DNA of 63,862 bases from Chrysemys picta bellii (Eukaryota): positions 19,406,139-19,470,000 of the forward strand of contig NC_088807.1 in NCBI RefSeq assembly GCF_011386835.1, written 5' to 3'. Positions 3,439-52,904 of the stretch are shown piece after piece (the first letter of the stretch is position 1; each line of letters opens with the position of its first letter). The translations under genes were made by a program, and so were the position numbers. The notes beneath the pieces are model-generated. The model had not been told where the DNA came from. It worked only from the letters and a program-made list of their open reading frames with translations, and ran no database searches.

Positions 3439-3484
3439 TGCGGGCCGCTCTGGGCTCACAGAGGTACTTGCTTCTCACATGCAG

Positions 3485-6400
3485 GCTTCGTGCCGCTTCC
3501 CTTCTTCCTCCGGCATGACTCCCCAATGTCCTGGGACCTCTGCGCCCCTATCCCGGCTGCCGAGAGCCTGGACTCGTGGGAGAGCAGCTTGCTGTGGGAT
3601 GGAGGGTCTCTGGTCATCGCCAATTCTTCCCAGGGGCAGCCGGGGACACCAGGGGGAGGTAAGGAGGGATTGAACTTGGGATCTTTGGCACCAAGAGCAC
3701 AGGGCTTTGCCACTGGAGCTAAAGGAGGAGGTCTAGCGGCCGCTAGCAGTAGGAGGCTGTTATCCTGGCAGCAAAGGGGCATGTGATGCATTTGGCCACA
3801 GACAGCACCGTCCACACCAATTACCAAGCTCAACCAGTTTTGAGCTTTAATATGCACACGTTAGGACAATATGTTACTACTTTAATTAAGCATAAAAAGG
3901 AAATAAGGCCGATAGAGCAGGGCAGCGTGACGATAAATTATTCAGCCTTAGGGCACAGGTAGCTGGTGCTGTTGGTGTTAGATTGAAGCCGGTCCAATCT
4001 GGTGTAAGTCTTATGTTGATTTATTCCCCTTTGGTCAAACCCACCGTTTTTATCCCCCGTGTCTTGTGACATGAGGCAGGCGCAGATCACTGAAACGGCT
4101 GTCTCCACCAACATATCTTAAATATAATTCCATACATGCCAGCGTAAAATTCTTTGAACGGCTGCGTTTTTTCCCTTAGTTGGCTAAACCGTTGCTTGGT
4201 ACCTTTTTTATTTATTTTCACTATTACGATTCGTCTTAATGAACGCTGGGTTTTCATTGCGTTCATGTGTCTTCCTGCGTCTTACGACAGGTTGTGTTGG
4301 CTTTTCCTCTTGGCGTCGCTGCGTGTCCAGCGTGTTTCGTGCTCCCTCGTCTGTTTTACCAGGGAGGTGGAGGTCTGGCTAGTGAATCCCCCATTTGGCT
4401 TTTGCCCTGTTATCTCTGCAGGCCAAGGTGACACAAACCAACTTTCTGATTTGTATTTTTGTTACAAGTTTTGAAAGCTGAAAAATTCCCTTTGGTGTTT
4501 TCTTAGAACACTGTTAAATAGAGAAGAGTTACATTTTCCACATTATTTAATAGAGTTAATTACACGTCTCTTTCCCCCCCTCTCTTTCTCCTTTTCCCTT
4601 TTTTTTTGTCTCTGGTTTTTCTCCTCTTTTTCCCCCCCCTCCTTTCTCTAACCTTCCCTCTTTTCGCTTCCCAGCTGGCTCCATCTCCCCACAGCCACCT
4701 CTGGATCTCTCCGGGTTTCCTTTGGCCGAGCCCTGGGACGTCCTCTCGCCGGATGCCCCCGCTGACGCAGCCCCCGATTTCGTTCACCCCCTGGTGACGG
4801 CTGCTCACCTGGATCCTGGTGCGCCGTGGTTGATGTCAAGGATAAATCCAGGTGACGTCTGGGGTGGGGGGTCGCTGCTTTTGCCTGCCCTGGGGAATTG
4901 TGGGTAGCTGGGATCCTGGTGTTGTGTGTCTCTGGGTCTCGGCCTGGGCTGGATCAGACACAGAGGCTAAGCTCCCACCGCTCCTCTGTAGGGAGGCAGA
5001 TGGTGTCCCAGTGCATGCTCTGAAATTCTGGCCAACTGCATGTTAGCCTTGTCCGTACCCTACTGCCTAGCCATGTCTGCCCCCGTGCATGCTGGGAAAA
5101 CCTGGCCAATGGCCTGTCCATATCCTACCACCCAGCCATCTCTGCCCCAGGGCATGCAGGGAAAATGTGGCCAATGGCCTGTCCATATCCTACCACCCAG
5201 CCACCTCTGCCCCAGGGCATGCAGGGAAAATGTGGCCAATGGCCTGTCCATATCCTACCACCCAGCCATCTCTGCCCCAGGGCATGCAGGGAAAATGTGG
5301 CCAACGGCCTGTCCAAACTCTACCACCCAGCCATCACTGCCATGGAAGATTTGGACAGAAACGACTGTTTTTGGTTTTTTTTCTCTTGGGTAAAAGTGAC
5401 TCGTTCTCATTTTTTACAAAAATGACTTTTTTTTTCTGTTTTGTTGCCAAAATGACTCTTTCTTTTACCTTTGAGTTTTCTATTTTTTCTTGTTGTTGCT
5501 TTTCTCTTTTATCTCCTTCCTTTCTTCTGTTTCTTTCCTTTTTTTTTACCACCTTCCCCCCCTCTTCTCTTTCCAGCTGGATCTACCCCCACTCCACCAC
5601 TTCTGGATCCCGCTGGTTTTCCTTTGCCCGAGCTCTGGACCGGGCCCCACATGGACGCCCCTCCTGACGCAGCTTCCGATTCCGCTCTGCCCCCCGTGGC
5701 TGCTGCCTGCCTGGACGTACCCGCAGATGTACCCCCGACATCAATGACAAATCCAGGTGAGGCCCCAGGGGAAGGTAGGCGCTGCCCACCCTGGAGGACT
5801 CTGTGTAGTTAGGATCCTGCATGTTATGAGTTGCTGATTCTCGGTCCGGTTAGAACAGGCTGAGCAGAGAGGCCGAGGGCTGGACCGGATCCAGAGGCTG
5901 CTCCCTCCATGCCCCTCCCTAAGGAGGCAGGCGCTGCCCCAGTGCACCCCGGGAAAACCGGGCCAACGGCCTGTCCATGTCCTACCGCCCAGCCGTCTCT
6001 GCCCCAGTGCATGCTGGGAAAACCTGGCCAATGGCCTGTCTGTATCCTGCTGCCCAGTATCTCTCATGGCGTCTCTGTCTTGCCAGACGTCACAGACCCC
6101 CTGCCGCTACTCTGCAGCACCCTGGGCTACTTCCCCAATGGTCTGCGGGTCTTCAGCCTGCAGAAGGCCATGTGGCTGAGGCACGGGGTGAACCTGGAGG
6201 CATTCAGCCAGCAACAGGGATATCTGAGCACCCTGGACTATCTGACCAGGCTGCGTGGGATCAGGCTACAGGGCTGGAGAGAGGGGAAAAGTGTCTCGTT
6301 AAGCTTCTAAAAGATGAGGCGAGAGGGATGGGGCTCCATGCGTCAGGGCTGAACTGGTCTTGATTAACGACGAGGACCAATGGGTATCTTGCACCTTCCT

Positions 6401-9400
6401 CTGAGGCTCATTAGAGTGTATTGTCTTGGGCTGACCCAGGACACTTTCTGGGCTTAACCGAGGTGTCCTGGGTGAATTGCTACCACCTGGTGGCAGGATG
6501 AGGGACTCTTGTCTGTGATGTAGTTAGGTCGACACGGTGTCAGTGTAGACGCCGGGTTGCTCAAGTCATGTTACCGGCTTTCAGGTAGGGTGACCAGATG
6601 TCCCGATTTTATAGGGACAGTCCTGATATTTAGGAATTTTTCTTATATCGGTACCTATTACCCCCCACCCCCGTCCCGATTTTTCACACTTTCTATCTGG
6701 TCACCCTACTTTCAGGAGCCGTCCCACTATGCCCCACGCCGACAGTACAATGGATGCAAGCTTTCCTGACCGGGACGCGCACTGCTGACACAGCTGTGTG
6801 CTGACAGAATTACGTCATGTAGACGTGGCCTTAGAGGCATCTAGAGTCAAACCAAATTGAAGTTTATTTAACGGCGCTTGAGACCGATTCAAAGAAGGGT
6901 TGGCCAACATAAGGTTGCAGGGGAAAGTAAAACAGAACACGCCATCTTCAGCTTCTAGTTTATTAACAAGTTCCTTCCCTCTCTCCTGAGGTATTTCTCA
7001 CCCAAAGGTCGGTCCATATAACGCTTGTCCGGCTCGGAGAGCTGGGATTTCATGAGGCACTCATGCTGGCAAAATATCTCCTCTGGAACGATACCATCTT
7101 GTGCCCATTTCTTTTTCTCTTGTAGGATGGGGTGTGTCTACGTTTGAAACTCTACAATGCTTCAGGGAGGTGTCCTCACACCCCTGAGCTATGCAGTTAA
7201 GCGGACAGTTTTCTTGCCCTACAGTCTCATTCATTATCTTTTCATTTCATTATCTTCAGCTCAGCCCAGAGGGTCTCCTATTCAGAGTCTTTTCTTGGGG
7301 GTTCTTTTCTTTGTAAACGCTTAGGTGCGTACCTGCTCCAGCCTGTAAACCCAGCAGGGCTGGGTGGAAAGATACTTGATTGTTCTCATTCTCAACTGAG
7401 TTAGCCGAGACCCGCCCTGCCTCGGGGGACATGCTTCATCTCCAGCAGTTTCAGAACATAATATCCTACGTTTTAGGTATCACTTAAACTCCTTCCTGTA
7501 CAAACACCTCACGCTAGCCACAAGGATCGGCCAGCCCTTAGCTTTCAGCCCCCTTCGGTGACGTCTCAGGAGGGTGGCCAGAAGCAGGTGTAATATACCT
7601 GTCTGGGCACGTCCGCGTCACGCTCCCCAGCGACGTGGCATCTCCCACAGTGCAGCCTCCTATCCCCAAGAGCGGGGACCCTGGTGCACTGTGGGAGATG
7701 CAGTCCAATCAGGGAGGCTCTGCTGTAGGGTAGAATCGGGGGGGCATAACGCACCCCGGCGACTTTTCTGAATGGAAACATTTTGTTTTTTTAATGAAAA
7801 CTTGAAATTTTCCGTGGAAGATTTGGACAGAAACGACTGGCTTTGGTCTTTTTCTCTTGGGTAAAAGTGACTTGTTCTCATTTTTTACAAAAATGATTTT
7901 TTTTCCTGTTGTTATGTTGCCAAAATGACTCTTTTTACCCTCGAGTTTTCTCTTTTGTTGTTGTTGTTTCTCTTCTCTTTTATTTCCTTCCTTCCTTCTG
8001 TTTCTTTCTTTCTTTTTTTACCACCTTCCCCCCTCTTCTCTTCCCAGCTGGATCTACGCCCACTCCACCACCTCTGGATTCTGTTGGTTTTCCTTCGCCC
8101 GAGCTCTGGACCGGGCCCCACATGGACGCCCCTCCTGATGCAGCCCCCGATCCCACTCTGCCCCCCGTGGCTACTGCCTGCCTGGATCCCGCAGACGTAC
8201 CCCCGACATCAATGACAAATCCAGGTGAGGCCCCAGGGGAAGGTAGGCGCTGCCCACCCTGGAGGACTCTGGGTAGTTAGGATCCTGCATGTTATGAGTT
8301 GCTGATTCTCGGTCCAGTTAGAACAGGTTCAGCAGAGAGGCCGAGGGCTGGACCGGATCCAAAGGCTGCTCCCTCCATGCCCCTCCCTAAGGAGGCAGGC
8401 GCTGCCCCAGGGCATGCTGGGAAAATGTGGCCAATGGCCTGTCCATACCCTACCACCCAGCCGTCACTGCCATGGTGCATGCTGGGAAAACCTGGCCAAT
8501 GTCCACACATTGTCTCTCTGGGTGGTGCTCTCCAAGGGCATAGGTTTGGGGTCTTGTGGGCGGGAGGGGCTCCCCTTCCCGTTGCTCAGCACCGCCGTCT
8601 CCCTCCCTCCGTGCAGACTTGGGTGAAGTCTTGACCCACGTCTCTCACACTCTGAGATGCCACCCCAAGGGTATGAGGGTGAAGCCGCTGACGAAGAGGC
8701 TGCGGAAGGAGCATGGGGTGGACCTGTTGGCATTCAGCCAGGACGGGGGGTACCAGGGAGTCGTGTCCTTCCTGCAGGAGATGCCGGGTATCGAACTCTG
8801 GAACCCCGAGAAGGGAGAGAAGTGTCGTGTCCTGAGCTGTACCTTTAAGAAGAGTGAGTGGGGAGATGGTTTCTTGTAGGGCTGCCCCAGCCCGGCCCCC
8901 TTCCTGAATGTGGAGAGAGCCCCTGGCCAATGGCACACTGGCCTCTCCGCACCCAGCTGTGTCTCCCCCAGTGCATGCTGGGGAAACATGGCCAATGGCC
9001 TGTCTGTATCCTGCTGCCCAGTATCTCTCATGGTGTCTCTGTCTTGCCAGACGTCACAGACCCCCTGCCGCTGCTCTGCAGCACCCTGGGCTCCTTCCCC
9101 AATGGCCTGCGGGTCTTCAGTCTGAGGAAGGCCATGTGGCAGAGGCACGGGGTGAACTTGGAGGAATTCAGCCAGCAACAGGGATATCTGAGCACCCTGG
9201 ACTATCTGACCAGGCTGCGTGGGATCAGGCTGCAGGGGCTGGAGAGAGGGGAAAAGTGTCTTGTCCAGCTTCAGAAGGGTGAGGAGAGAGGGATACGGTC
9301 CAGGCGTCAGGGCTGAACTGGTCTTAGGTAGGATGAGGGCAGGTTATCCCACTGCTCACACCAATGGACATCCCGCATCTTCCTCTGAGGCCAAATGGAC

Positions 9401-12400
9401 TAGATGGCCCTTTGGGCTTCCTCCCCCATGAGATTTCATCTCCCACAATGCACTGTCCTACTGCCATCATGCACCACCTCCCGCCACCAAGAATAGAGGC
9501 TATGGTGCATTGTGGGAGATGTAGTCCGACCAGGGAGCCTGGGCTGTAGAGGAGAATGGCAGTCACAAGGCATCTGAACCACAACTCCCATGAAGCACCG
9601 CAGTGACTTTTCTAAATTGAAACAGCTCACTGAAAACTTGAAATTTTCTATGGAAAATCTGGAGCACAGTGAGTCCTTTTTGCCTCATGTTTTCTTGACA
9701 AGCGTGACCTCCCCCCCTCCACTTTTTTTTTTTTTTTTTTTTTGAGAAAAGCGACTTTTTTCCCTCACTCTTTTTTGACATCAGCCATTTTTTCTCTGAT
9801 TTTTGACAAAAGCGAGGTTTTTCCCTCCATATTTTTTTTTGACAAAAGTGACATTTTTCCATCTGTTTTCTTGACAAAAGTCACTTTTTTACTTCACATT
9901 GTTTGGCAAAAGCGACCTTTCCCCCCCTCTGTTTTTTTTTTTTTTTTTGAGAAAAGCCGCTCCTTTTTTCTCACATTGTCTTGACCAAAATTACTTTTTT
10001 TCCCCCTTCACGTTTTTTGACACGTGCAATGGTTTTCTCTCGGATTATTAACAAAAGCAATGTTTTCCCACAGCATTTTTTGACAAGAGTCGCTCCTTTC
10101 TTCCTCAGCTTTCTTCACAAACGGCGACTTTCAGTTTCCTCGGGCCTGGTCTACCCGTAAAACGTCGGTCGACGGAGCTGCGGCGTTCAGGGGTGTGAAC
10201 CAACCGCGCTTCTGAGCCCCGCAGCCTCGCTGCCCTGGCCCCGGAGTAGACTTGACTAGGCGGAGGATGAATGTGTCCGTCAATGTGGTTCCCGTTATGC
10301 GGGGAGCGAAGTTCCCCCAGCAAACCCCCGTTCCGGTGCTATAATCGGTGCGGCGGGGTTACAGCCCCGCAGACACGGCCCCATGGCTGCGCTGCTCTGA
10401 CGTCCGTAGTGTAGACGTGGCCTCAGGGTTTTTCGGACAAACTCGAGTTGGTTTTTTTTTCACTCCGATGTTTGACAAAAGCCTCCGTTCCCCACAGTTT
10501 TCTTCACCAAAGGGACTCTGTTAGCGCTTTCTGGGGGGACAGAAATATCTCCCCCCCCCCCCCTTTCTTCTGTTTGTTTTGCAAACGTGATGCTTTTCTC
10601 CTCAGTCTTTTGACCAAAAAATATGGTAGGAAAGGTGGAAGCGGCAGCCGGGCCTGTGCCCATTATGAGGGATAGCCGTGCCCGGTGGTGGGAGCTGGGG
10701 GGGGACGGGACATGCCCAGTGGTGGAAGCTGTGGGGGGAGGGGAACGTGCCCGGTGGCAGGAGCTGGGGGGCAGAGGCGTGCCCGGTGAGGACAGCTGGG
10801 GGGGTGAGGGACGTGTGGGGGCCGGGTGTACTTGTCTTTTCACTCCCACTGTGGTGCTCTTGTTTCTTCTCCCTTCCTTTAGGTGACGCTGTGAAGCCCC
10901 CTGCTCCGCAGCCCCCCCCAGACCCCGCTCCCCCATCGGCCCAGCCCAGCAGCAGCCCCCCGCCCGATGCCCCTGCCGACGGGGGGCCGACGGGAGCCCC
11001 GGGGGAGACGCCCGGTGAGCAGCTCTGCCGGCTTCTCAGTGAGGCCGCCGCGTGTGGGGCGTGAGCCTGGGCGGGGAGGCCGCAGCCCAAGCCAGGCCCC
11101 CCAACGCCACCTCCCATTGTCCCATAGCCTGAGCTCCCGTCTGCCCCCGTGGGGAAGGGCTCTGTGGGGCTCGGCGGCTGGTCTCTTTCCCTCACCCATC
11201 TCTGGGGGGGCTATGGGGCAGGGCACGTTGGAGGGAGATGGCTGGGGGTGTTGGGGGGGGAGTCTGTGGGTCTGTGTCGACGGGGGCTAGGTGTGTGGCA
11301 CCATTGCCATTTGTGGGGGACATCTTCGGGGCTGTTGGGTTCATGTTGGTGGGGGGGCTGGGGTTAGAGGGAGCGGGGTAGGGGGATGTCGGGGAGGCTG
11401 GGGATGCAGGGAGCAGTTTGGTGGGGTAGGTGGTTGTGGGGGGGCTGGGGATGGGGGAGCAGGTTGGTGAGGTGAGGGGTGGGGGGGATGGGGATGGGGG
11501 AGCAGGTTGGGAGCTGTGGGGGGGGCTGGGGATGGAGGGAGCAGGTTGGTGGGGTGTGGGGACTGGGGATGGGGGAGCAGGTTGGTGGGGTGGGGTTCTG
11601 TGAGGGGATGGGGGTGGAGGGAGCAGGCTGTGCGGGCTGTGTGTGTGTGGGGGTGCTGTGGGGATGCCTGTGGCCGGGATACAGGGGGTGGCTGGGGGGA
11701 CACACTGGCAGCGGACTGTGAAGAGTGGGGGGCAGCATGTGGGGTGCTCTCCTGGGCCCTGCCCCCGCTCTGGGGACGCCCGAGGACTCGGGCCCGGGGG
11801 CTGCCGAACAACCCCTCGCCCCCAGGGCCGGGTGCACACGCACAGGGTGCCCCATGACGGGGGGGCTCTCAGCTGGCGCAGGCTCTCACAGCCCCCCCAT
11901 CCCCCCGTCTCGTGGCAGGCTTGGCCGAGGTCTCGGCCTGGGTGCGGGACGTGCTGGGCCGTTTCCCGCTGGGGCTGAAGGTGGGCAAGCTGAAGGAGGC
12001 GCTGCGGAGCGAGCGTGGGCTGGACCTGGAGGAGCTGAGCCGTCTGCGGGGCTGCGGGGACGCCCTGCACCTGCTCCGGGCTCTGCCCCACCTCTGGCTG
12101 CGGGACCCGGGCCAGGGCGACGCCTGCCTGGCCCGGCTGGACGTGGGTAGGTGGGCAAGCGGCTGGGAGGGTGCCGAGCAGCTGGGCGGGAGCTGGGGTG
12201 AGATGCAGCTGGGGCCGTGGAAGGTGTGGGGAGGACGTGGCTTTTTACAGATCCAGACTAACAGGGCTACCCCTCTGACACTTGAGTACTTGTCGCACCT
12301 TAGAGACTAACAAATTTATTTGTGCATAAGCTTTCGTGGGCTAAACCCCACTTCATCGGCTGTATGTAGTGGAAAGTACAGTAAGAAGATATATATCATC

Positions 12401-15400
12401 TGTGGTGCATCCTTCTGGGTGTTGTCTTAATGCTGCCACATTTATTTTCAAAGAAGGTGTTTTCAAAAGAAGGTGCTCGCTTCTAACTCCCAAGGCCCTC
12501 AGTATGTCGGATCTTCTTTAATGAGCCCACTTGACAAGTTTTATTGTTCTTGGGTCTGGCTTCCATCCCCTCTCCAACTGTTGCAGCTGTCTGGAGGTGC
12601 TGCCTTCCAGGCCTTACCCATTCACACCTCGTTCATTCAACAGGGCAATTGATTAAAAGGGGGCAGATATTATTCTACTAGCGAAAAGACAGTTTTCTTC
12701 TACCTTAACTATCCTTAGGGGCTATAACATTATACCAAGGCTCAATACAAAGGGTACGTCCAGACTACCCGCCGTATCGGCGGGTAGCGATCGATTTATC
12801 AAGGATCGATATATTGCGTCTCGTTAACACGCGATATATCGATCCCCGAACGCGCTCACCGTCGACTCCGGAACTTCACCAGAACGAGCGGCGGTAACAG
12901 AGTCGACGGGGGAGCCGCGGCCATCAATCCCGCGCCGTGTGGACCCAAGGTAAATCTATCTAGATACTTCGACTTCACTACGCTATTCACGTAGCTGAAG
13001 TTGCGTATCTTAGATCGATTTCCCCCCACCCCAGTGTAGACCAGCCCAAAGTTTCTATATAAGGATTTGGTACAAAGTTCCCATATCAAAGGACTTGATA
13101 TAAAGTTGTATGAAAATGGAGGTTATATGTGGAAAGACTTGATACACCTCTACCCCGATATAACGCTGTCCTCAGGAGCCAAAAAAATCTTACCACGTTA
13201 TAGGTGAAACCGCGTTATATCCAACTTCCTTTGATTCACCGGAGTGCGCAGCCCACTCTCCCCCCCCCCCCCCCCCCCCCGGAGCGCTGCTTTACCATGT
13301 TATATCCAAATTCGTGTTCTACTGGGTCGTGTTCTAGCGGGGTAGAGGTGTACAAGGTTGTATGAAGAGGCATAATACAAAAGTCATATGAAAATGATGA
13401 AAACGATACGCAGTTACGCAAAGATGCTTAATGCGGAGATTTATCTACAGGGGCAGGGTACGGCCGGGCATGTGCCCAGGAGTGGGGGTTCCTGCTGTGT
13501 GTGTAGGGGGGAATTGGGGCACAACAGAGATTATGGGGTGTGGGGAGGCTGTTCCTCGTGGTGGGCAGCATGTGGGGTGCTCTCCTGGGCCCTGTCCCTG
13601 CTCTGGGGACGCCCGAGGACTCAGGCCCGGGGGCTGCCGAACGGCCCCTCGTCCCCAGCGCTGGGTGCATACGCACAGAGTGCCCCATGGCGGGGGGGCT
13701 CTCAGCGTGCGCAGGCTCTCACAGCCCCCCTATCCCCCCCGTCTCGTGGCAGGCTTGGCCGAGGTCTCGGCCTGGGTGCGGGACGTGCTCGGCCGTTTCC
13801 CGCTGGGGCTGAAGGTGGGCAAGCTGAAGAAGGCGCTGTGGAGCGAGCGCGGGCTGGACCTGGAGGAGCTGAGCCGTCAGCGGGGCTGCGGGGACGCCCT
13901 GCACCTGCTCCGGGCTCTGCCCCACGTCTGGCTGCAGGACCTGGGCCAGGGCGACGCCTGCCTGGCCCAGCTGGACGCGGGTAGGTGGGCAAGCGGCTGG
14001 GGGGGACAGCTAGGGCCGTGGAAGCTGGGGGAGTACGTGGCTGGGAGGGGGGCTCTGGTCCATGTGGGAGGGGGTAGGGTACGGCTGGGCATGTTCTCGG
14101 GGGGTGGGGAGGGGGGAGGCATGGCTGGGCATGTGCCCAGGGAGTGGGGGTTCCTGGTGGTGGGGGGTTAGCAGGGCACAACGGAGATTATGGGGTGTGG
14201 GGAGGCTGTTCCTGGTGGTGGGAGGCATAGGTGGGCCTGTTGCAGGGCAGGGGGCTGTGCCCGGGGGTGGGGAGCTAGGGGAGGGGAGGGGAGAGGGGGA
14301 CATGCCCAGTGGCAGGAGCTGGGGGAGGGGAGGGGGACGTGCCCGCTGGTGGGAGGGGGATGTGTGGGGGCCGGGTGTACATGTCTTTTCACTCCCACTG
14401 AGGTGCTCTTGTATCTTCTCCCCTCCTTTAGGTGAGGCTGTGACGCCCCCTGCCCCACAGCCCCCCCCAGACCCCACTCCCCCATCGGCCCGGCCCAGCA
14501 GCAGCCCCCCGCCCGATGCCCCTGCCGACGGGGGGCCAACGGGAGCCCCGGGGGAGACGCCCGGTGAGCAGCTCAGCCGGCTTCTCAGTGTGGCCGCCGC
14601 GTGTGGGGCGTGAGCCTGGGCGGGGAGGACTCAGCCCAAGCCAGGCCCCCCCAATGCCACCCCCCCATCGCCCCATAGCCTGAGCTCCCATTTGCCCCCC
14701 TGGGGAATGGTTCTGTGGGGCTCGGCGGCTGGTCTCTTTCCCTCGCCCATCTCTGGGTGGGCTATGGGGCAGGGCATGTTGGAGGGAGATGGGTGGGGGG
14801 CGTTGGGGGGTGTGTCTGTAGGGCTGTTTTGGCGGGGGCCAGGTATGTGGCACCATTGCCATTTGTGGGGAAAATCTTTGGGAGGCTGTCTGGTTTATGT
14901 TGATGCGGGGGCCTGAGAGGGGGCTGGGGTTGGAGGGAGCCTGTGGCCGGGGTACAGGGGCTGGCTGGGGGGGGGGATACTGGCAGCGGACTGTGAGTAG
15001 TGGGGGGCAGCATGTGGGGTGCTCTCCTGGGCCCTGCCCCCGCTCTGGGGACGCCCGAGGACTCAGGCCCGTGGGGGCTGCCGAACGGCCCCTCGTCCCC
15101 AGCGCTGGGTGCACATGCACAGAGTGCCCCATGACGGGGGGGCTCTCAGCGTGCGCAGGCTCTCACAGCCCCCCCATCCCCCCGTCTCGTGGCAGGCTTG
15201 GCCGAGGTCTCGGCCTGGGTGCGGGACGTGCTGGGCCGTTTCCCGCTGGGGCTGAAGGTGGGCAAGCTGAAGGAGGCGCTGCGGAGCGAGCGCGGGCTGG
15301 ACCTGGAGGAGCTGAGCCGTCAGCGGGGCTGCGGGGACGCCCTGCACCTGCTCCGGGCTCTGCCCCACATCTGGCTGCAGGACCCGGGCAAGGGCGACGC

Positions 15401-26100: not shown

Positions 26101-28184
26101 GGTGCTGCCCCCCACCCCAGTGGGATGGGGGGTGACGGACCGGTTAGCCCCAGAGCAAACCTCCAGATCTCGCAGTCCGGCCCTGAACACCCCCTGCACC
26201 ATGGAGGGGTTTGGCCAGGGCTAGGCCCTGCCTCCCCAGCTCTGGGAGTGGAGTGTGGGCTAGTGGTTAGAGCAGGGGGCTGGGAGCCAGGACTCCTGGG
26301 TTCTCTCCCTGGCTCTGGGAGGGGAGTGGGGGCTAGTGGTTAGAGCCGGGGGAGGGTTGGGAGCCAGGAGGCCTGGGTTCCCTTTTGACTCTTTCCTGGC
26401 CTCCTTTGCACAGCCCTGGAGGACCCCCGCTGCCAACTCAGGGGTGATTATTTGGTGCCACCCCAAGGTGAAGTGCCTCCGGCCCCATTCGTCACCTGCC
26501 GCCCAGGTGCCATCCCCGCGCCCGCCCTGTTTGCTCAGCGGGCAGGGTGAGGGCCCAGCTGCTTTCCCCTTTAACTTCCAAGGAAGTTCTGGGCCCAGCT
26601 CCAAGGCCTGCCTGGGGGGCCGGGGGGCGGGGCTGGCAGAGCCCAGGGGGAGGAGCGCAGCCTGGGGAATCATTAACAGGGACAGGACAAAGCGCCGGGC
26701 GGAGGATATGAACCCGGATCCCTGGGGCAGGTAGGTGTGGGTTGCAGTGGTTAGAGCAGGGGGGCTGGGAGCCAGGACTCCTGGGTTCTCTCCCCGGGTC
26801 TAGGAGGGGAGTGGGGGCTGGTGGTTAGAGCAGGGGGACTGGGAGCCAGGACTTGGTTCTTGGCGGGGAATGGGGGCCTGGGCCCCATTATGGCTCTTTC
26901 TTGCTGGTCTTCCCCATTCCTCGATTTTACGAGATTAATCCCTGGCAGGGCTGGTTCTGTTTGTTTGCAGGAAACTATGCCCTGGTGATGAGGTTTTTCC
27001 TTGTTGGGAGTCTGGGGGGGCGGGAAGGGGAGCGTCTATGGTCTATGAGAGAACCCCAGCCACCCGGCTCAAACCACTGGACCCCCACTCCCCTCCCAGA
27101 GCCAGGGATAGAACCCAGGCGTCCTGTTTCCCAGCTCCCTCCTTCTCTAACCACTAGCCCCCACTCCCCTCCCAGAGCCAGGGAGAGAACCCAGGCGTCC
27201 TGGCTCCTAGCCCCCTCCCCCCCGCTCTAACCATTGCACCTCATGCCCTGTCCAGCCCATAGCCCTATAACTCACAGAAATGGAGGTGGGAAACCAAAAA
27301 CACACCCTTTGAATCTAATCTTATCGCGCCTTCCGCTGCAGCGCCCGGCCGTGACCAGGGCGGTGGGGTGTGTCTCTCTTCCCCAAAGCTGGGATCTTGC
27401 CCTGAAGCCTTGTCTCCCTCCCTCTAGGGCCTTCGACCGGCGGAGCCCCCCAGGGCAGGAACCCGATTGCCGAGGGCTGGGTCCCGGGGGCACTCATAGG
27501 TGCAAATTGGCCCAGGGGAGGTCTGTGCCAGCATGACAGAGGCACCCGTCTGTTTTAGATACTCCTCACTGTGGTATCTGGGGAAACTGAGGCACGGAGA
27601 GACCAGGGCCATAGCGCAGCAGGACCTTGAACCCAGGTCTCCCCAGTCTGAGGCTGTCCTTCTGACCCCTAGCCCAGCCTAACGTCTGCCCCCCAGGCCA
27701 GACAGGGGCGGGGTCCAGCTGTGAGGTGCCCCAGGACAGAGACACCCCTTGGTGTGGGGGTGTTTCCCTACAGATGTCGCTACCTCCTAGGACTGCACCG
27801 CTGGAGGTGCAGGGTGCTGCACGTTGGGGCTTGCGGCGAACCGAACGTGGATTAGGCGCCATGCTTTGGACAGGGGACGGGAAGGACTGACGACTGTCAA
27901 CTCTGTCTGGGCAGTGCCCGGCCCGACGGGGCCCCGATCTCGGTGACTCCGTGTCTGGGCAGCGCCCGGCCCGATGGGGCCCCGATCTCGGTGACTCTGT
28001 CTGGGCAGCGCCTGGTGCAGAGAGAGAGGACTGATCATCTGACCTGGTTGCCAGGTTGGTTGGCAGAGAGCAGGGTGTGTTGGGGAGGTGTCTGTGTGTG
28101 TATTTATTTTGTCTGTCTCTCTGATTGTGTGTGTGTGTGTTGGGGGGGTGCCCCCCAACCCCAGCCCCACTCACCACGGGGCCC

Positions 28185-34550
<6,366 letters not shown>

Positions 34551-43592: not shown

Positions 43593-43607
43593 AGTCTCTC
43601 CTATTTC

Positions 43608-45518: not shown

Positions 45519-45561
<43 letters not shown>

Positions 45562-47238: not shown

Positions 47239-49146
47239 ACAAAACCTTCCCCATCTGAACCTCACACTAATTTCTGATTAGATCTGGGACAACGATCGGG
47301 GGAGAGTTAGTTCCCTGGTAGCTCAGAAAATTGTAGTTTAGGCCAAGTGACTTTGCCCTGCTAGGTTCCAGAGCAGGGATTTTGAGCTTTTTAAATTTGC
47401 AGACCCCTAAGAAGATGTCAAATAGAGAAGCTGACCCCTTGGGAAATCTTAGGCAGAGTCTGGGAACCACCAGGGGGCTGCGGATTGGAGGTTACAAACC
47501 ACTTGTCTCAATCCCCTAAGCCTGGGGCGGCTGCTCTAAAGAGCAGGGTTTTCCATCACGTCATGCATTCCCTGCCCCACTCCACGATGAGAGAAAAAAT
47601 GGCTGCACCAGCAAACAAAAACAAACCCAGGCTGTGAGACTTGCAGCTGCTTGCTGTGTAGACGTCACCTTAGAGCCAGGCTGAGAACGAGCTTGATGGA
47701 TGAGGATCCCACTTCTCACACCATTTGGCACTCAACTATCTCTGAAGCAGCCGGCGTCTCCCTTAGTTGGAGAAGTTGCTCGAGGGAACTCGGTACTGAG
47801 TCAACCCAGTCATCTCCCTGCAGCACACGCTGCCCCAGCGGGCTACGTGAAGGAGCCTGCAGTGATGACTTAGCCTTGCTGGGTTCTAGGTTCTGCAAGC
47901 CAAGGGTCACTCTGCTCTAGCACCTTTAAGAGGCGATTTCCCCACCAGCTCATGGATTTTCCCCTCTGTGATGGGAAAAATGCTGCAGAAAGGAGCAGAT
48001 CATTCAGGAAGCAAATTTTATTGAGAGAACAGCTGGAGATTCATTAAATAAAATATGAGAGGATTCCCCCAGAGGGGTGCGAAAATAAATATTTAAATAA
48101 CATTTTTTCTTTGCTCAGGGCAATGATATGGCTCCGGAGTGGCCACAGACCCTCTCCCGCCAGCCCCCCATAACACTGGGCATGTGCATGCCCCCACCAA
48201 AACAGGGTGGGGGCTAGATCCCCAGAGAATGGAGGGGGTTCTAGATTCCCCAGCCCACAACAAAATGGAGCACACTCTAGATTCTCCACCAGAATCAGTG
48301 CTACATTCCTCAGGCCTCCACATAACTGAGGGGGTTCTAGATTCATCAAAGTGGGACAGGTTCTAGATCCCACCATGTCCTGACCAAATGGAGTGTGTTC
48401 CAGATGCCCCACACCACAATCTAGCCGGTTCTAGATTCCCAGCCCTCCCTCACCACGTGGAATGGGTTCTAGACCCTCCTTTCCCAAACCAAGCGAGTTC
48501 TAGATTCAACAGATTCCCCCAACTGGTGGAGAAGGTTCCAGTTTTCCCACCATGCTGGGGTGGGTTCTAGATCTGCCCCAGCCCCTACTAAAAAAGAGGG
48601 TGGGTTCTGGATCCATCCCAGATGGCTGAATCCCAGAAAGACCCCAGCTTTAAGGGAAGGAGTAAATGTTTCTATGTACTTTCTGCTAGTGAATCCACCT
48701 CTCAGTCAGACCAGTGCTACTGGGAGGGAACTGGCTGCCTCACTTGGAGACAGCTGCCTTCCACCTCTAGGGGGCACTGGAGCCAATCCAGCCCCACACT
48801 GGGGTGCTGCAAGGATATGGGCCATCCACCTACATTCAAACTGGCCCGCTGACATCATGAAGACTCCACCCAACCCCACATCAACCCCTGGGCCCCTTCT
48901 CCTCACCATTTCCCCTTCCCCGCCTGCTCCAGATCCGCTCTCAGCTGGCGATGCGGAAGCCGGGGCAGAATCCGGCTCCCTCTCCCCTAGCAGGAGAGAT
49001 GCTTTTCTAACACGTGGGTGCTTGTCCTACAATCTCCCTCCTATCCAGCCTGACCTAGCCTATTGTGTTGTCCCCACCCATGTCAATTTCACACACACCC
49101 CTCCACGCCAATTTCACACAGACATGGTCAACTCACAATGCCCACC

Positions 49147-52100
49147 TCACAGGAGGACACACTGGTCAGGTTTGTGCTTGGGTGGCTTCCTCTTACTCCC
49201 CATAGGTGGGGGGTGGGGTGGGGAGATACGGGGCAGACGAGGCTCTGGCTTGATGGCCGCCCATGGTGCCCCCCCGTCCTCTCGATGTTTGTAGGGGGAT
49301 GCCAAGCTGGGCTCACCCAGAGGCAGGGGCCTGAAGGGTGGTCTCTCCCTGGGGAAATCTGCGGCACCAGGGATGTCTTGGATGGGGGACCAGGCTGGCT
49401 CAGGGGAGAGCACGGCCATCAGAGGATGGACACCAGACATGGGTCCTGGCAAAGCTGGGGAAAAGGACGGCTCTGGGCTGGGACAGCTTGCAGAGGTGGG
49501 GGCAGAGTTAAGGCCGTAGAGGACAGCATCCGTGGCAACCACATGGTCCAGGCTCAGCGGTGGGGTGGGACCACAGGGGGAACCTGCAGGGGACAGGGAT
49601 ACAGAAGATGCCAGAGGAGAGCTCGGCAGGGAGAGCTCGGCCCCCAGGTCATATGGCACAGTGCCAGCAGCTGGTGTAGCTGTGGCGATGCCCTCCATGA
49701 TGTCTGTCTCTTCAGTGATGGGCCCCATGGATTCATGCTCCCATCTCATCTCTGGTGACCAGGGGGCTGCTGAGACAGCGGGGGATACGGGGAGCTCAGC
49801 TGGGGACCCCGGTGCCATCCTGTGCCCTGGAGGAGGGCTGCAAAGAACAGGGGGCTGCTCTGGGTCTGCAGGAGCCAGGGTGGCCTCTGGGGAGCTGGCA
49901 GAGATGGGAGGAGATGGACAGATCACAGCTGGGGCGGCCAGCGCCACATCGGGGCTGGCAGGAGCGACGACTGCCTCTGGCAGAGATGGGGAGAGACCTA
50001 AACAGACAGGAGAGAAGGGAATTCACTCAGTGACTGGGAAGCTTAGAGAGGGAGAAAGCGCCCCCCACTGAGCCCCCAACCCCATGCTGAGCCCCCGCCC
50101 CGCTCCCTGCAGCACAGCGCCCCCTGCTGAGCCCCCATCCCCTGCTGAGCCCCGCCCCACTCCCCGGAACCCAGCGCCCCTGGCAGTGACCCAGCCTGGC
50201 CCTGCTTAGCTCGATCCCACTCAGGCCCAGCCTGACCCACGGTCTCACAGCTCAAGCCGCAGAGGCCCTCGCTCCCCAGGTTCGATCCCTGGGACGGTCT
50301 TTCACCCCCCACTCACCCCTGACGCCCAGCACGTACCAGTCTCCTCGCTGGGGAGCTCCTGGGGGCAGACCGGGAAGAGCATCGTCTGCACCCCCCAGCC
50401 CTCCACCCTGACCGCCCCCGGCATGGCTGCCAGCTGCTCCTTCACCGAGGCCGAGCTGTCCAGGGGGAAGGGGTGACTGTAGGCGGCGCCGTAGGCCTGG
50501 CGGAAGCGGAAGAGGGAGATGCCCCCGGGGTGGCCCCGCAGGACCCTCGCCACATTCTGCTCCAGCTCGGCCCGCTCGGCCACGGGGGGGTCCAGCAGGG
50601 GGCTGGCCGGGCGGGCGGGACGGGGCAGCCGGCTGGGGGCCAGCGCGGGGCTATTCAGGGCAGCCCCCCGGTACGCATCCAGGCCCAGTGGCTGGTTGGC
50701 GAAGGTCAGCAGGGGCGGCTGCCGGGGGGCGGCCACAGGAAGGCGGGAGCTGGGGAAGTGGCTCAGCGAGACAGCTCGGGGCAGCCAGGCGTTGGCTTGG
50801 TGCCCGGGGGCAGATCCGGCCGGCGGGTGGCCCAGGGGGGCAGCCAGGTGGTGGCAGGAGTTCCAAGGCCTGGGAGCTGGAGGGAGAGGAGAGAAGAGAT
50901 TCCCGGTGAGACGCCGCCCGTCGCCATCCCCGGTAGGATGCACGAGCCCCTCTAGGGGGCGCCGGTCGCATGGAGCCGGACCCCGCTGGGCGATCAGCGG
51001 TTGGGCTTCGGGGGCTGCCACATTGTCATGGGTTTTGCAATGCACTGGCTCTGCCCGGGAGCTGTCGTAAGCCAGCGCAGATTTTGCACTGAGCCGGGGC
51101 TCCCCCTAGGGGCAGCTGGGCCCCATAGCACAAGCCTGGGTCTTTCAGCTCCATCGCTAGAGACTTGGGCAAAGAATCAGGGGTGGGGGGAGGGGGTGTC
51201 CAGGTTCGCTTCCCCAGGCACAGTCACTCCCTGGGACCTGGCGTCCGCATTTAAGGCGGGGGGTTTCCTGCACCCCCTTTGCTGCCTCCTCTGTCCCAGC
51301 CCTGTTTACATGAGGCCCGTTGGTCATTCAGGGTACCCCCGGGCTCCCCATCATTGATTTCACCTGCCCCAAAGCAGAGGCAGGACCATATAGCTTGCCT
51401 TGTTACAGCAAGCTGACGCGCTCCACCCCAGAGGCAGCTGCATTCGCAGGGCTGGACTGTGCCCCCCTGCCAGAAGGCATCAAAGGGAGAGCTGTGGTTA
51501 AGTTTCGCAATCTGTAGGCAAGAGTTATTCTGCTATTTTCAAGGGGGAGAGGGAGAGAATTTGCCAGAGGTAGATGGCAGAACTGGGACCAGAGCCCTGT
51601 TCTGACCACTAGACCCCCACCCCCCTCCTAGAGCTGGGGATGGAACCCAGGAGTCCTGCCCTCTCCCCTCCCCCGCTCTAACCATTAGACACCCACACCC
51701 TTCCCTGAGCCAGGGAGAGGACCCAGGAGTCCTGACATAGACCTGTCCTGAAAATCACTGTTGCGCCTGGTAGTGTAGACAACACCTGTAGCGCTCGCTA
51801 CCCCAATAAAGGGAAGGGTTAGGGACACACAGCCACCACATGCAATTCCCATTTCCCCCAGTAGGGGGCAGCCCCCTACACCCCATGACTATACCTGATT
51901 TAGGAGCCTCTGCCTGCTGCCGTTTGGGTGGCGCCTCCTTGTGGATCTGGGGGTGACGGATGCGTCTCTTGGGGGGCTTGGCCTCCGGCAGCAGGTCGCA
52001 GACTGGGCGCCGGCACCGGACCCACGGTTCCTTGCCCTCCTCGTCCAGGACCACCAGCTCCTTCATGTCACCCAGCAGGTGGTGCAGTGAGCGGTAGCCG

Positions 52101-52904
52101 TGCCGGGGCAGATCCAGGTGCCGGCCATGGTGCTGGTGGAAGAGCCTCCCGAAATCCCACAGGGGGACACCCCCTGGGTGGCTCAACAGTAGCCCCAGCA
52201 CGGCCCCCTGGAGGGTCAGCTGCGAGCCGGGATCCAGTCCCCCCCCCGCAACAGCTGGAAGGAGAAACAGCTCTTGGGGGGCTCAAAGGGCACCAGGTGG
52301 GAGACTTTACCCTTCACTGGCCACCAGGGGGACTCGCCCACAGAACAGCAGAGGGGTGGGCCTGGGCACAGCCAGGGTACCAGGGTAGATGGGCCCCTGC
52401 TCCAAAGTGGGAGAGAAATTCCCTGCACACAGTGGGACTGCAGGTCAGGACTAAGGGTCTCATCAGCAGTGGACAACTGGGGGGGGGGCAGCCCCCCTCC
52501 CCAGAGCCACTGGGCCCCACTCCCCTCCCAGAGCTGGGCATGGAACCCAGGCATCCTGGCTCCCAGCCCCCCCCCCCGCTCTAACCACTAGACCCCACTC
52601 CCCTCCCAGAGCCGGGGATAGAACCCAGGAGTCCTGCTGGCTCCCAGCCCCCGCCCCCCGCTCTAACCACTAGACCCCACTCCCCTCCCAGAGCCAGGGA
52701 TAGAACCCAGGAGTCCTGCTGGCTCCCAGCCCCCGCCCCCCGCTCTAACCACTAGACCCCACTCCCCTCCCAGAGCCAGGGATAGAACCCAGGAGTCCTG
52801 CTGGCTCCCAGCCCCGCCCCCCCACTCTAACCACTAGACCCCACTCCCCTCCCAGAGCCGGGGATAGAACCCAGGCGTCCTGGCTCCCCGGTTTCACCTG
52901 CCAT
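49147..52904 (-). CDS. Gene C: uncharacterised protein with two LOTUS (OST-HTH) domains, a Pro/Ser-rich tail and polybasic CaaX (KRKPPKHKPDQCVLL*); 585 aa, complete
   Basis: Exons 52904-52898 (GAGGCT-ATG-GCA-G|gtgaaa), 52254-51895*, 50876-50337*, 49997-49147 total 1758 nt, in frame; all introns are phase 1. LOTUS1 AVLGLLLSHPGGVPLWDFGRLFHQHHGRHLDLPRHGYRSLHHLLGDMKELVVL. LOTUS2 LEQNVARVLRGHPGGISLFRFRQAYGAAYSHPFPLDSSASVKEQLAAMPGAVRVEG. Confidence 0.82.

What the first reader, a model, noticed from the sequence alone, without database searches (positions are those of the whole stretch)
3485..52904. Cluster of three undescribed LOTUS-only genes (13 intact LOTUS/OST-HTH domains) flanking FAM83E
Seen: 13 intact exons in three genes (A 8, B 3, C 2) translate to the same ~75-aa pattern: helix, [HFY]P.G[LMV].l..L, G.dL, GY..l..lL..[MV]P, beta-hairpin. 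They are separated only by Pro/Ser-rich low-complexity exons. Established: this is the LOTUS/OST-HTH signature (compare TDRD7 LRAVLQSHKNGVAL...GFPTLEAYLRSVP, from memory). The vertebrate LOTUS proteins I know (TDRD5, TDRD7, MARF1) all carry Tudor or NYN/RRM domains. LOTUS+IDR-only proteins are known from C. elegans (MIP-1/MIP-2), where they nucleate germ granules. LOTUS domains bind Vasa/DDX4-type helicases or G-rich/G4 RNA. Inference: a lineage-specific vertebrate family of multivalent germ-granule, piRNA or RNA-regulation scaffolds.
Basis: partly seen in the sequence, partly recalled or inferred. Interest (0 to 1): 0.95.

Follow-up and report, generated by a model that had tools for sequence, protein, structure and literature searches.

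The report
Uncharacterised LOTUS-only gene cluster, painted turtle
Three real, spliced turtle genes beside FAM83E encode proteins made only of LOTUS domains and disordered linkers; they belong to an unstudied family found in lungfish, amphibians and non-avian reptiles, and no bird or mammal member turned up.

Summary
The window is Chrysemys picta. It contains 14 LOTUS-like exons: 13 intact (gene A 8, gene B 3, gene C 2) and one decayed pseudo-exon at 6083-6307.

- **The exons.** Eleven are one repeat type (own HMM, E 1e-29 to 1e-35; next best hit E 1.5). All have AG/GT borders, and the borders checked by hand are phase 1-1. Two are a second, more conserved type. One is a canonical Pfam OST-HTH.
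- **The fold.** AlphaFold models of both repeat types match solved LOTUS domains best (Tejas, TDRD7, TDRD5, Oskar, MARF1; TM 0.8-0.85). The type II profile hits the TDRD5 LOTUS by sequence (E 5e-7).
- **The genes.** Gene A is the NCBI model LOC101932420, named "uncharacterized protein". Gene C is confirmed by spliced RNA contigs in four runs from three studies and gives an intact 614-aa reading frame. Gene B matches turtle models and small squamate single-LOTUS proteins that also sit next to FAM83E in Anolis.
- **The family.** Full-length relatives carry only OST-HTH and DUF7515 hits, with no Tudor, NYN or RRM domain. I found no paper on the family.
- **Function.** No domain has the conserved C-terminal extension that eLOTUS domains need to bind Vasa. 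A multivalent minimal-LOTUS RNA or RNP scaffold is therefore more likely than a Vasa recruiter. Tissue and function remain untested.

The parts
3483..23197 (+). Gene A = Chrysemys picta bellii LOC101932420 ('uncharacterized protein', NCBI models of 1287-1323 aa). It has N-terminal and Pro-rich exons (3483-3659, 4289-4426, 4674-4850, 5576-5755, 8044-8223), seven type I LOTUS exons, one type II LOTUS exon and a long Pro-rich C-terminal exon. The first about 58 aa of the model lie outside the alignable window, at or beyond the N gap 2939-3438.
   Evidence: tblastn of P0147-P0152 gives 100% identity over 257 aa at 20491-21261 and 89-100% on the other exons.
6083..6307 (+). Decayed 14th LOTUS copy (pseudo-exon). 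It ends in an in-frame TAA and its donor GT has become AT. It belongs to a partial duplicate (5340-6361) of the unit 7812-9325.
   Evidence: HMM E 2.9e-31; flanks read; self-BLAST; not used by the NCBI models.
8610..8852 (+). Gene A, type I LOTUS exon 1
   Evidence: HMM E 3.9e-34; AG/GTGAGT borders; in NCBI isoform X3; Pfam DUF7515 22.5 bits and OST-HTH 12 bits, both below cut-off.
9047..9292 (+). Gene A, type I LOTUS exon 2
   Evidence: HMM E 1.3e-35; splice sites; NCBI models.
11912..12160 (+). Gene A, type I LOTUS exon 3, the first of three recent tandem copies (93-96% DNA identity)
13746..13994 (+). Gene A, type I LOTUS exon 4 (tandem copy)
15189..15437 (+). Gene A, type I LOTUS exon 5 (tandem copy)
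   Evidence: Pfam OST-HTH 14 bits, below cut-off.
15917..16165 (+). Gene A, type I LOTUS exon 6 (the copy that was modelled)
   Evidence: AlphaFold2 pLDDT 83.8. Foldseek top PDB hits are the Tejas, Oskar, TDRD7 and TDRD5 LOTUS domains, TM up to 0.83, probability 1.00. The Swiss-Prot AlphaFold DB top hits are the TDRD5/TDRD7 N-terminal LOTUS domains.
19793..20044 (+). Gene A, type I LOTUS exon 7 (divergent copy)
   Evidence: HMM E 2.2e-31; splice sites; 100% identity to the NCBI model.
20491..21261 (+). Gene A exon with a Pro/Arg-rich repeat followed by the type II LOTUS domain (about 21007-21240). This is the most conserved part of the family.
   Evidence: Type II HMM E 3.8e-38. Identity to relatives: 66% alligator, 57-67% squamates, 45% salamanders, 36% lungfish. 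Profile hit to TDRD5 LOTUS 3s93, E 4.9e-7. AlphaFold2 pLDDT 79. Foldseek TDRD7 3rco, TM 0.84, rmsd 1.2 A.
21950..23197 (+). Gene A C-terminal Pro/Asp/Thr-rich low-complexity exon
   Evidence: tblastn: 95% to Malaclemys, 67% to Caretta, 44% to Carettochelys.
28125..33265 (+). FAM83-family gene (SACK1/DUF1669 domain split over at least two exons), with a uPAR/Ly6 (SPACA4-like) gene nested at 30958-31527
   Evidence: Pfam SACK1 192 bits and 44 bits; UPAR_LY6 27.9 bits. The assignment to paralogue E rests on the SPACA4 neighbour as recalled from human 19q13.33 and was not tested.
37250..42013 (-). Gene B. Exon 1 is 42013-41843 (MEPWLEVVVV...KRPRRSPP...PMEWE) and exon 2 about 41376-41221. Three units follow, each a Ser/Pro-rich linker ending in a basic cluster (40873-40682, 39419-39225, 38191-37997) plus a type I LOTUS exon (40316-40068, 38819-38574, 37672-37427). 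In this window the last exon reads on to a stop at 37250.
   Evidence: tblastn of turtle models P0012, P0036 and P0016; translations; splice sites. The N-terminal motifs are shared with squamate single-LOTUS proteins. The convergent arrangement with FAM83 is the same in Anolis.
48015..52991 (-). Gene C. Tentative exon 1 is about 52991 (ATG) to 52898. Exon 2 is 52254-51895 (canonical OST-HTH LOTUS), exon 3 is 50876-50335 (Pro-rich stretch plus type II LOTUS), and exon 4 is 49995-49147 (Pro/Ser/Ala-rich tail and stop), with a 3' UTR to about 48015. The reading frame is an intact 614 aa (585 aa from the second Met).
   Evidence: Spliced contigs carry GT..AG introns: 49995|50335 in 4 runs, 3 studies and 2 organisms; 50876|51895 in 2 runs; 52254|52898 in 2 runs with short sides only. 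Frame. Pfam OST-HTH 34 bits. Type II HMM E 2.8e-33.

Best explanation
**Shown.** The window carries three real protein-coding genes of one uncharacterised vertebrate family. Their products consist only of LOTUS (OST-HTH winged-helix) domains strung on Pro/Ser-rich, partly basic, disordered linkers.

- Gene A has 8 domains and grew by tandem duplication of exons that each encode a whole domain.
- Gene B has 3 domains, built as linker-LOTUS units.
- Gene C has 2 domains and a long disordered tail.

**Shown for distribution.** The family is found from lungfish through amphibians to squamates, turtles and crocodilians. It did not appear in birds, mammals or ray-finned fish in the searches run.

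**Inferred for mechanism.** None of the domains has the conserved C-terminal extension of Vasa-binding eLOTUS domains, so they are minimal LOTUS domains like those of MARF1. I infer that the proteins act as multivalent RNA-binding or RNP-scaffolding proteins, with many weak LOTUS contacts (G-rich or G-quadruplex RNA being the precedent) plus disordered linkers that favour condensates. I do not think they are DDX4/Vasa activators. Expression appears restricted to some tissues or conditions; which ones is unknown.
For: - **Repeat reality:** HMM E 1e-29 to 1e-35 for the 11 type I copies; the type II profile finds its three further copies at E 3.8e-38, 2.8e-33 and 2.3e-6.
- **Exon structure:** every copy has an AG acceptor and, apart from the pseudo-exon, a GT donor; the borders checked by hand are phase 1-1. 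Tandem duplications show in self-BLAST.
- **LOTUS fold:** AlphaFold2 pLDDT 83.8 and 79.3. The top PDB matches are all LOTUS domains, TM 0.80-0.85.
- **Sequence-level LOTUS membership:** Pfam OST-HTH 34 bits for the gene C exon and 38-134 bits for full-length relatives. The type II profile hits TDRD5 (E 4.9e-7) and TDRD7 (E 3.2e-5). The type I profile reaches a crab TDRD5 and a bacterial NYN-LOTUS protein. Type I against type II by hhalign gives 85% probability.
- **LOTUS-only:** no other domain appears in five full-length relatives or in the gene C reading frame.
- **Real genes:** NCBI models match gene A at 100% identity. Spliced contigs cover gene C in 4 runs from 3 studies.
- **Tissue or condition restriction:** study P1 runs hold 36-47% of gene C words and 26-28% of gene B words, while other runs of the same species hold about none.
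- **Conservation:** LOTUS parts are better conserved than linkers. Against Caretta, the type II domain is 94% identical and the C-terminal exon 67%.
- **Conserved neighbourhood:** the gene B orthologue is convergent with a FAM83 gene in Anolis.
- **mLOTUS class:** each domain ends at or just after the beta-hairpin, at the exon border. The alignment columns after the hairpin are unconserved and Pro-rich, and no helix is predicted there. The criterion and the MARF1 precedent come from PMC5458760. G-quadruplex RNA binding by mLOTUS domains is as summarised in PMC8331183, citing Ding et al. 2020 (PMC7498356).
Against: - No binding, localisation or tissue data exist. The RNA status of the runs is a guess by the tool, and their tissues are hidden.
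- The eLOTUS extension is disordered in the free Oskar domain (PMC5458760), so its absence from an AlphaFold model is weak evidence. The stronger argument is the lack of conservation.
- Basic NLS-like clusters in genes B and C could mean a nuclear role.
- Absence from birds, mammals and teleosts rests on protein databases and a type I profile. No genome search was run.
- dN/dS between the young paralogous exons is uninformative, with only 6-10 differences.
Confidence: 0.55

Rival explanations
1. One reading: the proteins are germ-granule or nuage nucleators that recruit and activate DDX4/Vasa through their LOTUS domains, as Oskar, TDRD5/7 and C. elegans MIP-1/2 do.
For: The best structural matches are the Vasa-binding LOTUS domains of Tejas, TDRD7, TDRD5 and Oskar. 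The type II profile is closest to the TDRD5 N-terminal LOTUS. The LOTUS-plus-disordered-region architecture matches MIP-1/2 (PMC8331183). Expression seems restricted to some samples.
Against: There is no conserved C-terminal extension or alpha-5 helix, and the extension is essential for Vasa binding (PMC5458760). The PDB is dominated by eLOTUS structures, so top hits to them say little about subclass; the MARF1 mLOTUS also matches at TM 0.80. No germline expression has been shown. The family's distribution (frogs and salamanders, turtles and lizards) does not track germ-plasm versus inductive germline specification (my own knowledge).
Confidence: 0.2
2. The proteins are nuclear nucleic-acid-binding winged-helix proteins, for example chromatin or transcript regulators. 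The basic KKPARSKRRKS-type clusters would act as nuclear localisation signals.
For: Each gene B linker ends in a basic cluster. Exon 1 of gene B has KRPRRSPP, and the related motif YKRxRxxSP is conserved in squamates. Gene C has PPKRRIRHP and a C-terminal SKRKPPKHKP. LOTUS is a winged-helix fold, and lower-ranked structural hits are DNA-binding winged-helix proteins.
Against: All high-ranking structural and profile matches are LOTUS domains, not DNA-binding winged-helix families. Known LOTUS proteins are cytoplasmic RNP components. Basic clusters could equally assist RNA binding. No NLS prediction or localisation test was run.
Confidence: 0.15
3. The arrays are evolutionary debris: recently amplified exon arrays or pseudogenes that are transcribed but make no functional protein.
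For: One copy is already decayed (6083-6307). The three gene A tandem copies and two gene B copies are very young (93-97% identical), with dN/dS of 1.5-2.3 on very few changes. Copy number differs between turtle species.
Against: Thirteen of 14 exons keep open frames and canonical splice sites. Gene C has an intact 614-aa frame in spliced RNA. The type II domain is conserved from lungfish to turtles. LOTUS parts are more conserved than linkers. The neighbourhood is conserved between turtle and Anolis.
Confidence: 0.07

Closest known systems
[quoted passage not shown]
   Same: Both have a long tandem array of LOTUS domains without the eLOTUS extension. Gene A has 8 domains, as mouse MARF1 does. 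The MARF1 LOTUS structure 5yad matches the type II model at TM 0.80.
   Different: There is no NYN nuclease or RRM domain. The domains here are separated by long Pro/Ser-rich linkers. The type I profile did not retrieve any MARF1 among the hits I examined, so this is not an orthologue.
TDRD5 / TDRD7 (Tejas / Tapas)
   Same: These are the closest solved LOTUS domains by sequence profile (TDRD5 3s93, E 4.9e-7; TDRD7 2ly1, E 3.2e-5) and by fold (3rco, TM 0.84).
   Different: There are no Tudor domains and no conserved C-terminal extension on any domain. Domain number and gene structure also differ.
C. elegans MIP-1/MIP-2 (EGGD-1/2) and LOTR-1
   Same: The architecture is the same: LOTUS domains plus Ser/Pro-rich disordered regions and nothing else, for MIP-1/2 (PMC8331183). 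This is the best analogue for a multivalent scaffold.
   Different: The MIP LOTUS domains are classed as eLOTUS and bind the Vasa homologue GLH-1 (PMC8331183), whereas the domains here look minimal. No sequence relationship was found; this is analogy, not membership. LOTR-1 also has a Tudor domain (PMC9200344).
Pfam DUF7515 (PF24359)
   Same: The type I repeat is what this Pfam model detects: 37-119 bits on full-length relatives against a cut-off of 27, and 22.5 bits on a single exon.
   Different: Pfam calls it a domain of unknown function. The fold and profile evidence here places it within the LOTUS/OST-HTH winged-helix group.

Membership tests
LOTUS / OST-HTH domain (Pfam PF12872) | Sequence match to the family model above its gathering score | tested here: met
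   The gene C exon 51755-52201 scores 34 bits against a cut-off of 23.8. Full-length relatives score 38-134 bits. Single type I exons reach only 12-14 bits, and type II exons get no Pfam hit.
LOTUS / OST-HTH domain (Pfam PF12872) | Winged-helix fold (helical bundle plus beta-hairpin wing) that superposes on solved LOTUS domains | tested here: met
   Type I model: pLDDT 83.8; Tejas 8wxs TM 0.83, TDRD7 2lh9 TM 0.79. Type II model: pLDDT 79.3; TDRD7 3rco TM 0.84 at rmsd 1.2 A, TDRD5 TM 0.78, MARF1 TM 0.80.
LOTUS / OST-HTH domain (Pfam PF12872) | Profile-level homology to recognised LOTUS proteins | tested here: met
   The type II profile hits TDRD5 at E 4.9e-7 and TDRD7 at E 3.2e-5. The type I profile has no PDB hit, but it reaches a Tudor+OST-HTH crab TDRD5 (E 2.3e-5) and a bacterial NYN+OST-HTH protein (E 6e-8). 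hhalign of type I against type II gives 85% probability.
eLOTUS subclass (Vasa/DDX4-binding; Oskar, TDRD5/7 N-terminal domains, MIP-1/2) | Conserved C-terminal extension after the beta-hairpin that forms helix alpha-5 on Vasa | tested here: not met
   Type I domains end at the exon border 3-6 residues after the hairpin, and the next exon is a Pro-rich linker or another LOTUS domain. Type II columns after the hairpin are unconserved and Pro-rich across 21 sequences. No helix is predicted there. Caveat: the extension is disordered in free Oskar (PMC5458760).
eLOTUS subclass (Vasa/DDX4-binding; Oskar, TDRD5/7 N-terminal domains, MIP-1/2) | Direct binding to and ATPase stimulation of the Vasa/DDX4 C-terminal RecA domain | not testable with these tools
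   This needs pull-down and ATPase assays.
TDRD5 / TDRD7 | Tudor domain(s) C-terminal to the LOTUS domains | tested here: not met
   There is no Tudor hit in five full-length relatives of 1402-2056 aa. The gene C reading frame is complete without one.
MARF1 | NYN nuclease and RRM domains preceding the LOTUS array | tested here: not met
   There is no NYN or RRM hit in the full-length relatives. The N-terminal exons of genes A and B are low-complexity.
Pfam DUF7515 (PF24359) | Match above the gathering score of 27 bits | tested here: met
   Relatives score 37.7-118.9 bits for the whole protein, and the family is precomputed for most relatives. Single window exons score 12.6-22.5 bits, below the cut-off.

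The most novel reading that the evidence does not exclude
A family dating at least to the common ancestor of lungfish and tetrapods, made only of LOTUS domains and disordered linkers, acts as a valency-tunable organiser of RNA granules (germline or early embryo) in lungfish, amphibians and non-avian reptiles. Exon duplication sets the valency, from 1 domain in squamate gene B orthologues to 9 in some turtles. The family was lost independently in birds and mammals. This would add a fourth class of vertebrate LOTUS proteins beside TDRD5, TDRD7 and MARF1, and it would assign Pfam DUF7515 to the LOTUS fold.
Probability: 0.3. Interest if true: 0.8.

Novelty: new variant of a known kind. Interest (0 to 1): 0.6.

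Why it matters
Vertebrate LOTUS biology is currently written around three proteins: TDRD5, TDRD7 and MARF1. Each couples LOTUS domains to Tudor or nuclease/RRM modules.

This family shows a fourth architecture in vertebrates, with 1 to 9 LOTUS domains plus disordered linkers. Until now that architecture was known only from C. elegans MIP-1/2. The family is conserved across most non-mammalian, non-avian sarcopterygians and is transcribed and spliced.

- It offers a natural series of domain numbers for testing how LOTUS multivalency drives RNA binding or condensation.
- Its apparent absence from the model amniotes (mouse, chicken) would explain why it has been overlooked.
- It attaches a fold and a likely activity to Pfam DUF7515.

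The functional reading is inference only. Without tissue data the germline link is open.

Tried and rejected
- **PDB sequence search with the type I profile:** no hit even at E 10. The fold search was needed instead.
- **Pfam on single exons:** mostly below threshold. Whole relatives were needed.
- **dN/dS between young paralogous exons:** only 6-10 differences per pair, so the values of 1.5-2.3 are uninformative. The A1/A3 pair was misregistered by an indel and is discarded.
- **Weak tail of the big-library search (E 1e-8 to 1e-3):** mostly ankyrin- and TPR-repeat false positives, so not evidence of wider relatives.
- **Idea that genes C and B are one gene** (suggested by Chelonia mydas model EMP41027.1 = P0013): rejected. 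Gene C contigs run from the last coding exon into a 3' UTR down to about 48.0 kb, and other turtle models start gene B at 42013.
- **Idea that the small unlabelled ~200-aa hits were mammalian or avian:** rejected; they are squamate.
- **Literature searches** for DUF7515/PF24359 and four LOC identifiers: nothing found. A broader term search was swamped by herpetology papers.
- **The look-up of encoding contigs:** P0053 is not on record. The Anolis gene A orthologue has no called neighbour within 10 kb.
- **Complex prediction with DDX4:** not attempted.


Full report
**Source of the window**

The window is from the painted turtle. NCBI isoforms of Chrysemys picta bellii LOC101932420 match 20491-21261 at 100% identity over 257 aa and match the other exons at 89-100%. 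The small differences suggest another assembly or individual.

**The observation**

- It returns 11 copies with E 1.3e-35 to 1.7e-29. The next hit has E 1.5. Eight copies lie on the + strand between 6.0 and 20.1 kb, and three on the - strand between 37.4 and 40.3 kb.
- A second, distinct repeat ("type II", HPGGxSLFxFRxAY...MPDVV...GVQ) occurs once on each strand, at 20419-21264 (+) and 50305-51105 (-).
- A third kind at 51758-52282 (-) passes Pfam OST-HTH by itself (34 bits against 23.8). No further copies exist.

Every type I copy has a polypyrimidine/AG acceptor and, apart from the pseudo-exon below, a GT donor. The borders I worked through by hand are phase 1-1, so each exon encodes one whole domain.

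The copy at 6083-6307 is the exception. It ends in an in-frame TAA and its donor is mutated. It lies in a partial duplicate of the 7.8-9.3 kb unit, and the NCBI models skip it.

Self-BLAST shows the arrays grew by recent tandem duplication, with 90-96% DNA identity.

**Are the domains LOTUS?**

Single type I exons give only sub-threshold Pfam hits (DUF7515 up to 22.5 bits, OST-HTH 12-14 bits). The type I profile finds nothing in PDB sequences. The evidence comes from structure and from wider searches.

- The AlphaFold2 model of 15917-16165, built with the 11-copy alignment, is confident (pLDDT 83.8).
- Its best PDB matches are exclusively LOTUS domains: Tejas 8wxs (TM 0.83), Oskar, TDRD7 and TDRD5, all at probability 1.00. 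In the Swiss-Prot AlphaFold DB the best matches are the N-terminal LOTUS domains of TDRD5 and TDRD7.
- In the 1.84-billion-protein library, the type I profile reaches a crab Tudor+OST-HTH TDRD5 and a bacterial NYN+OST-HTH protein. The rest of the weak tail is ankyrin and TPR noise.
- For type II, a 21-sequence profile hits the TDRD5 LOTUS 3s93 at E 4.9e-7 and TDRD7 at E 3.2e-5.
- The type II model (pLDDT 79.3) superposes on TDRD7 3rco at TM 0.84 and rmsd 1.2 A, and on the MARF1 LOTUS 5yad at TM 0.80.
- Types I and II align at 85% hhalign probability.

All three kinds are therefore LOTUS domains. The type I repeat is what Pfam files as DUF7515.

**Are they genes, and are they LOTUS-only?**

*Gene A* is NCBI's LOC101932420, with isoforms of 1287-1323 aa. 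Its order is N-terminal and Pro-rich exons, seven type I LOTUS exons, the type II exon, then a 415-aa Pro-rich C-terminal exon ending at 23197.

*Gene C* I laid on four run assemblies.
- One 1741-nt contig joins 49104-49995 | 50335-50876 | 51895-52201 with GT..AG introns on the - strand.
- The 49995|50335 junction recurs in all four runs (three studies, two organisms). The 50876|51895 junction recurs in two runs.
- A further junction, 52254|52898, is seen in two runs but only with short sides, so it is tentative.
- Contigs continue into a 3' UTR down to about 48.0 kb, so gene C is not joined to gene B.
- The spliced frame is intact and 614 aa long: canonical LOTUS, Pro-rich spacer, type II LOTUS, then a 280-aa Pro/Ser/Ala tail.

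*Gene B* maps exon by exon onto turtle models (Natator CAM5123324 and others).
- It reads MEPWLEVVVV...KRPRRSPP...PMEWE, then three units of a Ser/Pro-rich linker ending in a basic cluster (KKPARSKRRKS) plus a LOTUS exon.
Runs of study P1 hold 26-28% of its words.

*Relatives.* Pfam finds only OST-HTH (up to 134 bits) and DUF7515 (up to 119 bits) in five full-length relatives of 1402-2056 aa. The few other listed families fall below their own cut-offs or are short low-complexity matches. There is no Tudor, NYN or RRM domain.

**Distribution**

The type I profile finds 82 clusters at E <= 1e-10. Those I could name are:

| Group | Genera |
|---|---|
| Turtles | 14 genera |
| Crocodilians | Alligator, Crocodylus |
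| Squamates | Podarcis, Lacerta, Tiliqua, Hemicordylus, Eublepharis, Anolis, Phrynosoma, Candoia, Varanus, Crotalus, geckos |
| Caecilians | Geotrypetes, Rhinatrema |
| Salamanders | Ambystoma, Lissotriton |
| Frogs | Hyperolius, Discoglossus, Pelobates, Pyxicephalus, Rana, Mantella, Lithobates |
| Lungfish | Protopterus |

- Every unnamed cluster has its best BLAST match among these, although some of those matches are only 22-42% identical.
- No bird, mammal or ray-finned fish appeared. This rests on protein databases; no genome search was run.
- All names are "uncharacterized protein", composition-driven misnomers such as "proline-rich protein 36-like" and "mucin-5AC-like", or UniProt's automatic "HTH OST-type domain-containing protein".
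- The type II domain is the conserved core: 66% identical in alligator, 57-67% in squamates, 45% in salamanders and 36% in lungfish. Linkers diverge much faster; the C-terminal exon is 67% identical to Caretta against 94% for the type II domain.
- Gene B's N-terminal motifs identify it with a squamate subfamily of ~200-aa proteins carrying a single LOTUS domain.
- In Anolis that gene lies 3.4 kb from a SACK1/FAM83 gene, convergent with it, and next to an Ig-domain gene. This is the arrangement seen in the window.
- In Alligator sinensis a second OST-HTH gene follows the gene A orthologue by 7 kb.

**Mechanism**

Jeske et al. (PMC5458760) showed that Vasa binding needs a C-terminal extension (alpha-5). 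That extension separates eLOTUS domains (Oskar, TDRD5/7) from minimal LOTUS domains (MARF1).

Here the type I domains stop at the exon border a few residues after the hairpin. They are followed by a Pro-rich linker or directly by the next LOTUS domain. In the 21-sequence type II alignment the columns after the hairpin are unconserved and proline-rich. No helix is predicted there.

I therefore class them as minimal LOTUS domains. The precedents for that class are RNA binding, including G-quadruplex RNA (Ding et al. 2020, PMC7498356, as summarised in PMC8331183), and CCR4-NOT recruitment by Drosophila MARF1 (PMC6168497).

Up to eight such domains on disordered linkers make a multivalent RNA or RNP scaffold the most likely reading, about 0.4-0.5. 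A nuclear role suggested by the basic clusters stands at about 0.15.

Study P1 runs hold both genes B and C, while other runs of the same species hold almost none of their words. This suggests tissue- or condition-restricted expression. The tissues are hidden, so the germline link is untested.

**Novelty and score**

I found no paper on these genes. They are present in databases as predicted proteins, and the domain family is known. What is new is the architecture in vertebrates, its phylogenetic range, the apparent absence from birds and mammals, and the assignment of DUF7515 to the LOTUS fold.

I rate it a new variant of a known kind, with interest 0.6.

**Relation to other notes of this scan**

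Two other first-reader notes cover the same stretch.
- s1-320958 says the exons are symmetric phase 1-1. This agrees with the LOTUS exon borders I worked through.
- s1-321074 says gene B is (basic linker-LOTUS) x 3. This agrees.

Noticed in passing
window 54200-58189: An LTR retrotransposon with two 460-bp LTRs that are 98.5% identical (54200-54660 and 57730-58189). It carries a 902-aa gag/protease-type ORF on the - strand (54697-57405). The high LTR identity suggests a fairly recent insertion. I only observed it.
   Followed up: no
window 61445-63528 (-): Ig-domain exons (Pfam ig, Ig_3, Ig_2), like a leukocyte-receptor-type gene. In Anolis an Ig-domain gene (Ig_C19orf38 and Ig_2 hits) also flanks the gene B orthologue (L003:1-2106), so the neighbourhood may be conserved.
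   Followed up: partly
window 30958-31527 (+): A uPAR/Ly6 three-finger gene (SPACA4-like, Pfam UPAR_LY6 27.9 bits) nested in an intron of the FAM83 gene.
   Followed up: partly
window 52500-52900, also 28630-28985, 38900-39210, 40380-40680, 16165-16445: Many copies of a tRNA-derived SINE, which translates as ...[10 protein letters not shown]...LTTRPHSPP.... They include a head-to-tail run just upstream of gene C exon 2. They attract very high contig depth in the RNA assemblies (up to about 6800) and many spurious joints, which makes the first exon of gene C hard to fix.
   Followed up: partly
window 4289-4426 (+): An exon in the NCBI gene A models encodes a short hydrophobic stretch (RLCWLFLLASLRVQRVSCSLVCF). 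It is not matched by the Caretta or Carettochelys proteins. It may be species-specific, an alternative exon or a model artefact.
   Followed up: no
P0013 (Chelonia mydas EMP41027.1) against window 50335-50583 and 37439-40349: An old automatic Chelonia gene model fuses the type II LOTUS exon of gene C with the gene B LOTUS exons. The RNA contigs here argue that the two are separate genes.
   Followed up: yes
L001:29615-32256 (Alligator sinensis KE696246.1): A second gene with an OST-HTH hit lies 7 kb downstream of the alligator gene A orthologue on the same strand. The LOTUS genes are therefore clustered in crocodilians too.
   Followed up: partly
window 1-1500 and 2939-3438: A GC-rich (67%) tandemly repeated stretch at the start of the window (self-matches offset by about 75-150 bp at 78-80% identity), and a 500-bp N gap directly upstream of the first alignable gene A exon. 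The first about 58 aa of the NCBI model are not found in the window.
   Followed up: partly
window 22039-22426 (+): An internal tandem repeat (period about 135 bp, 95% identity) inside the gene A C-terminal exon encodes repeated PDLTGDPD...PPxLPEIPPVLTA units. The isoforms and orthologues differ in length here.
   Followed up: no
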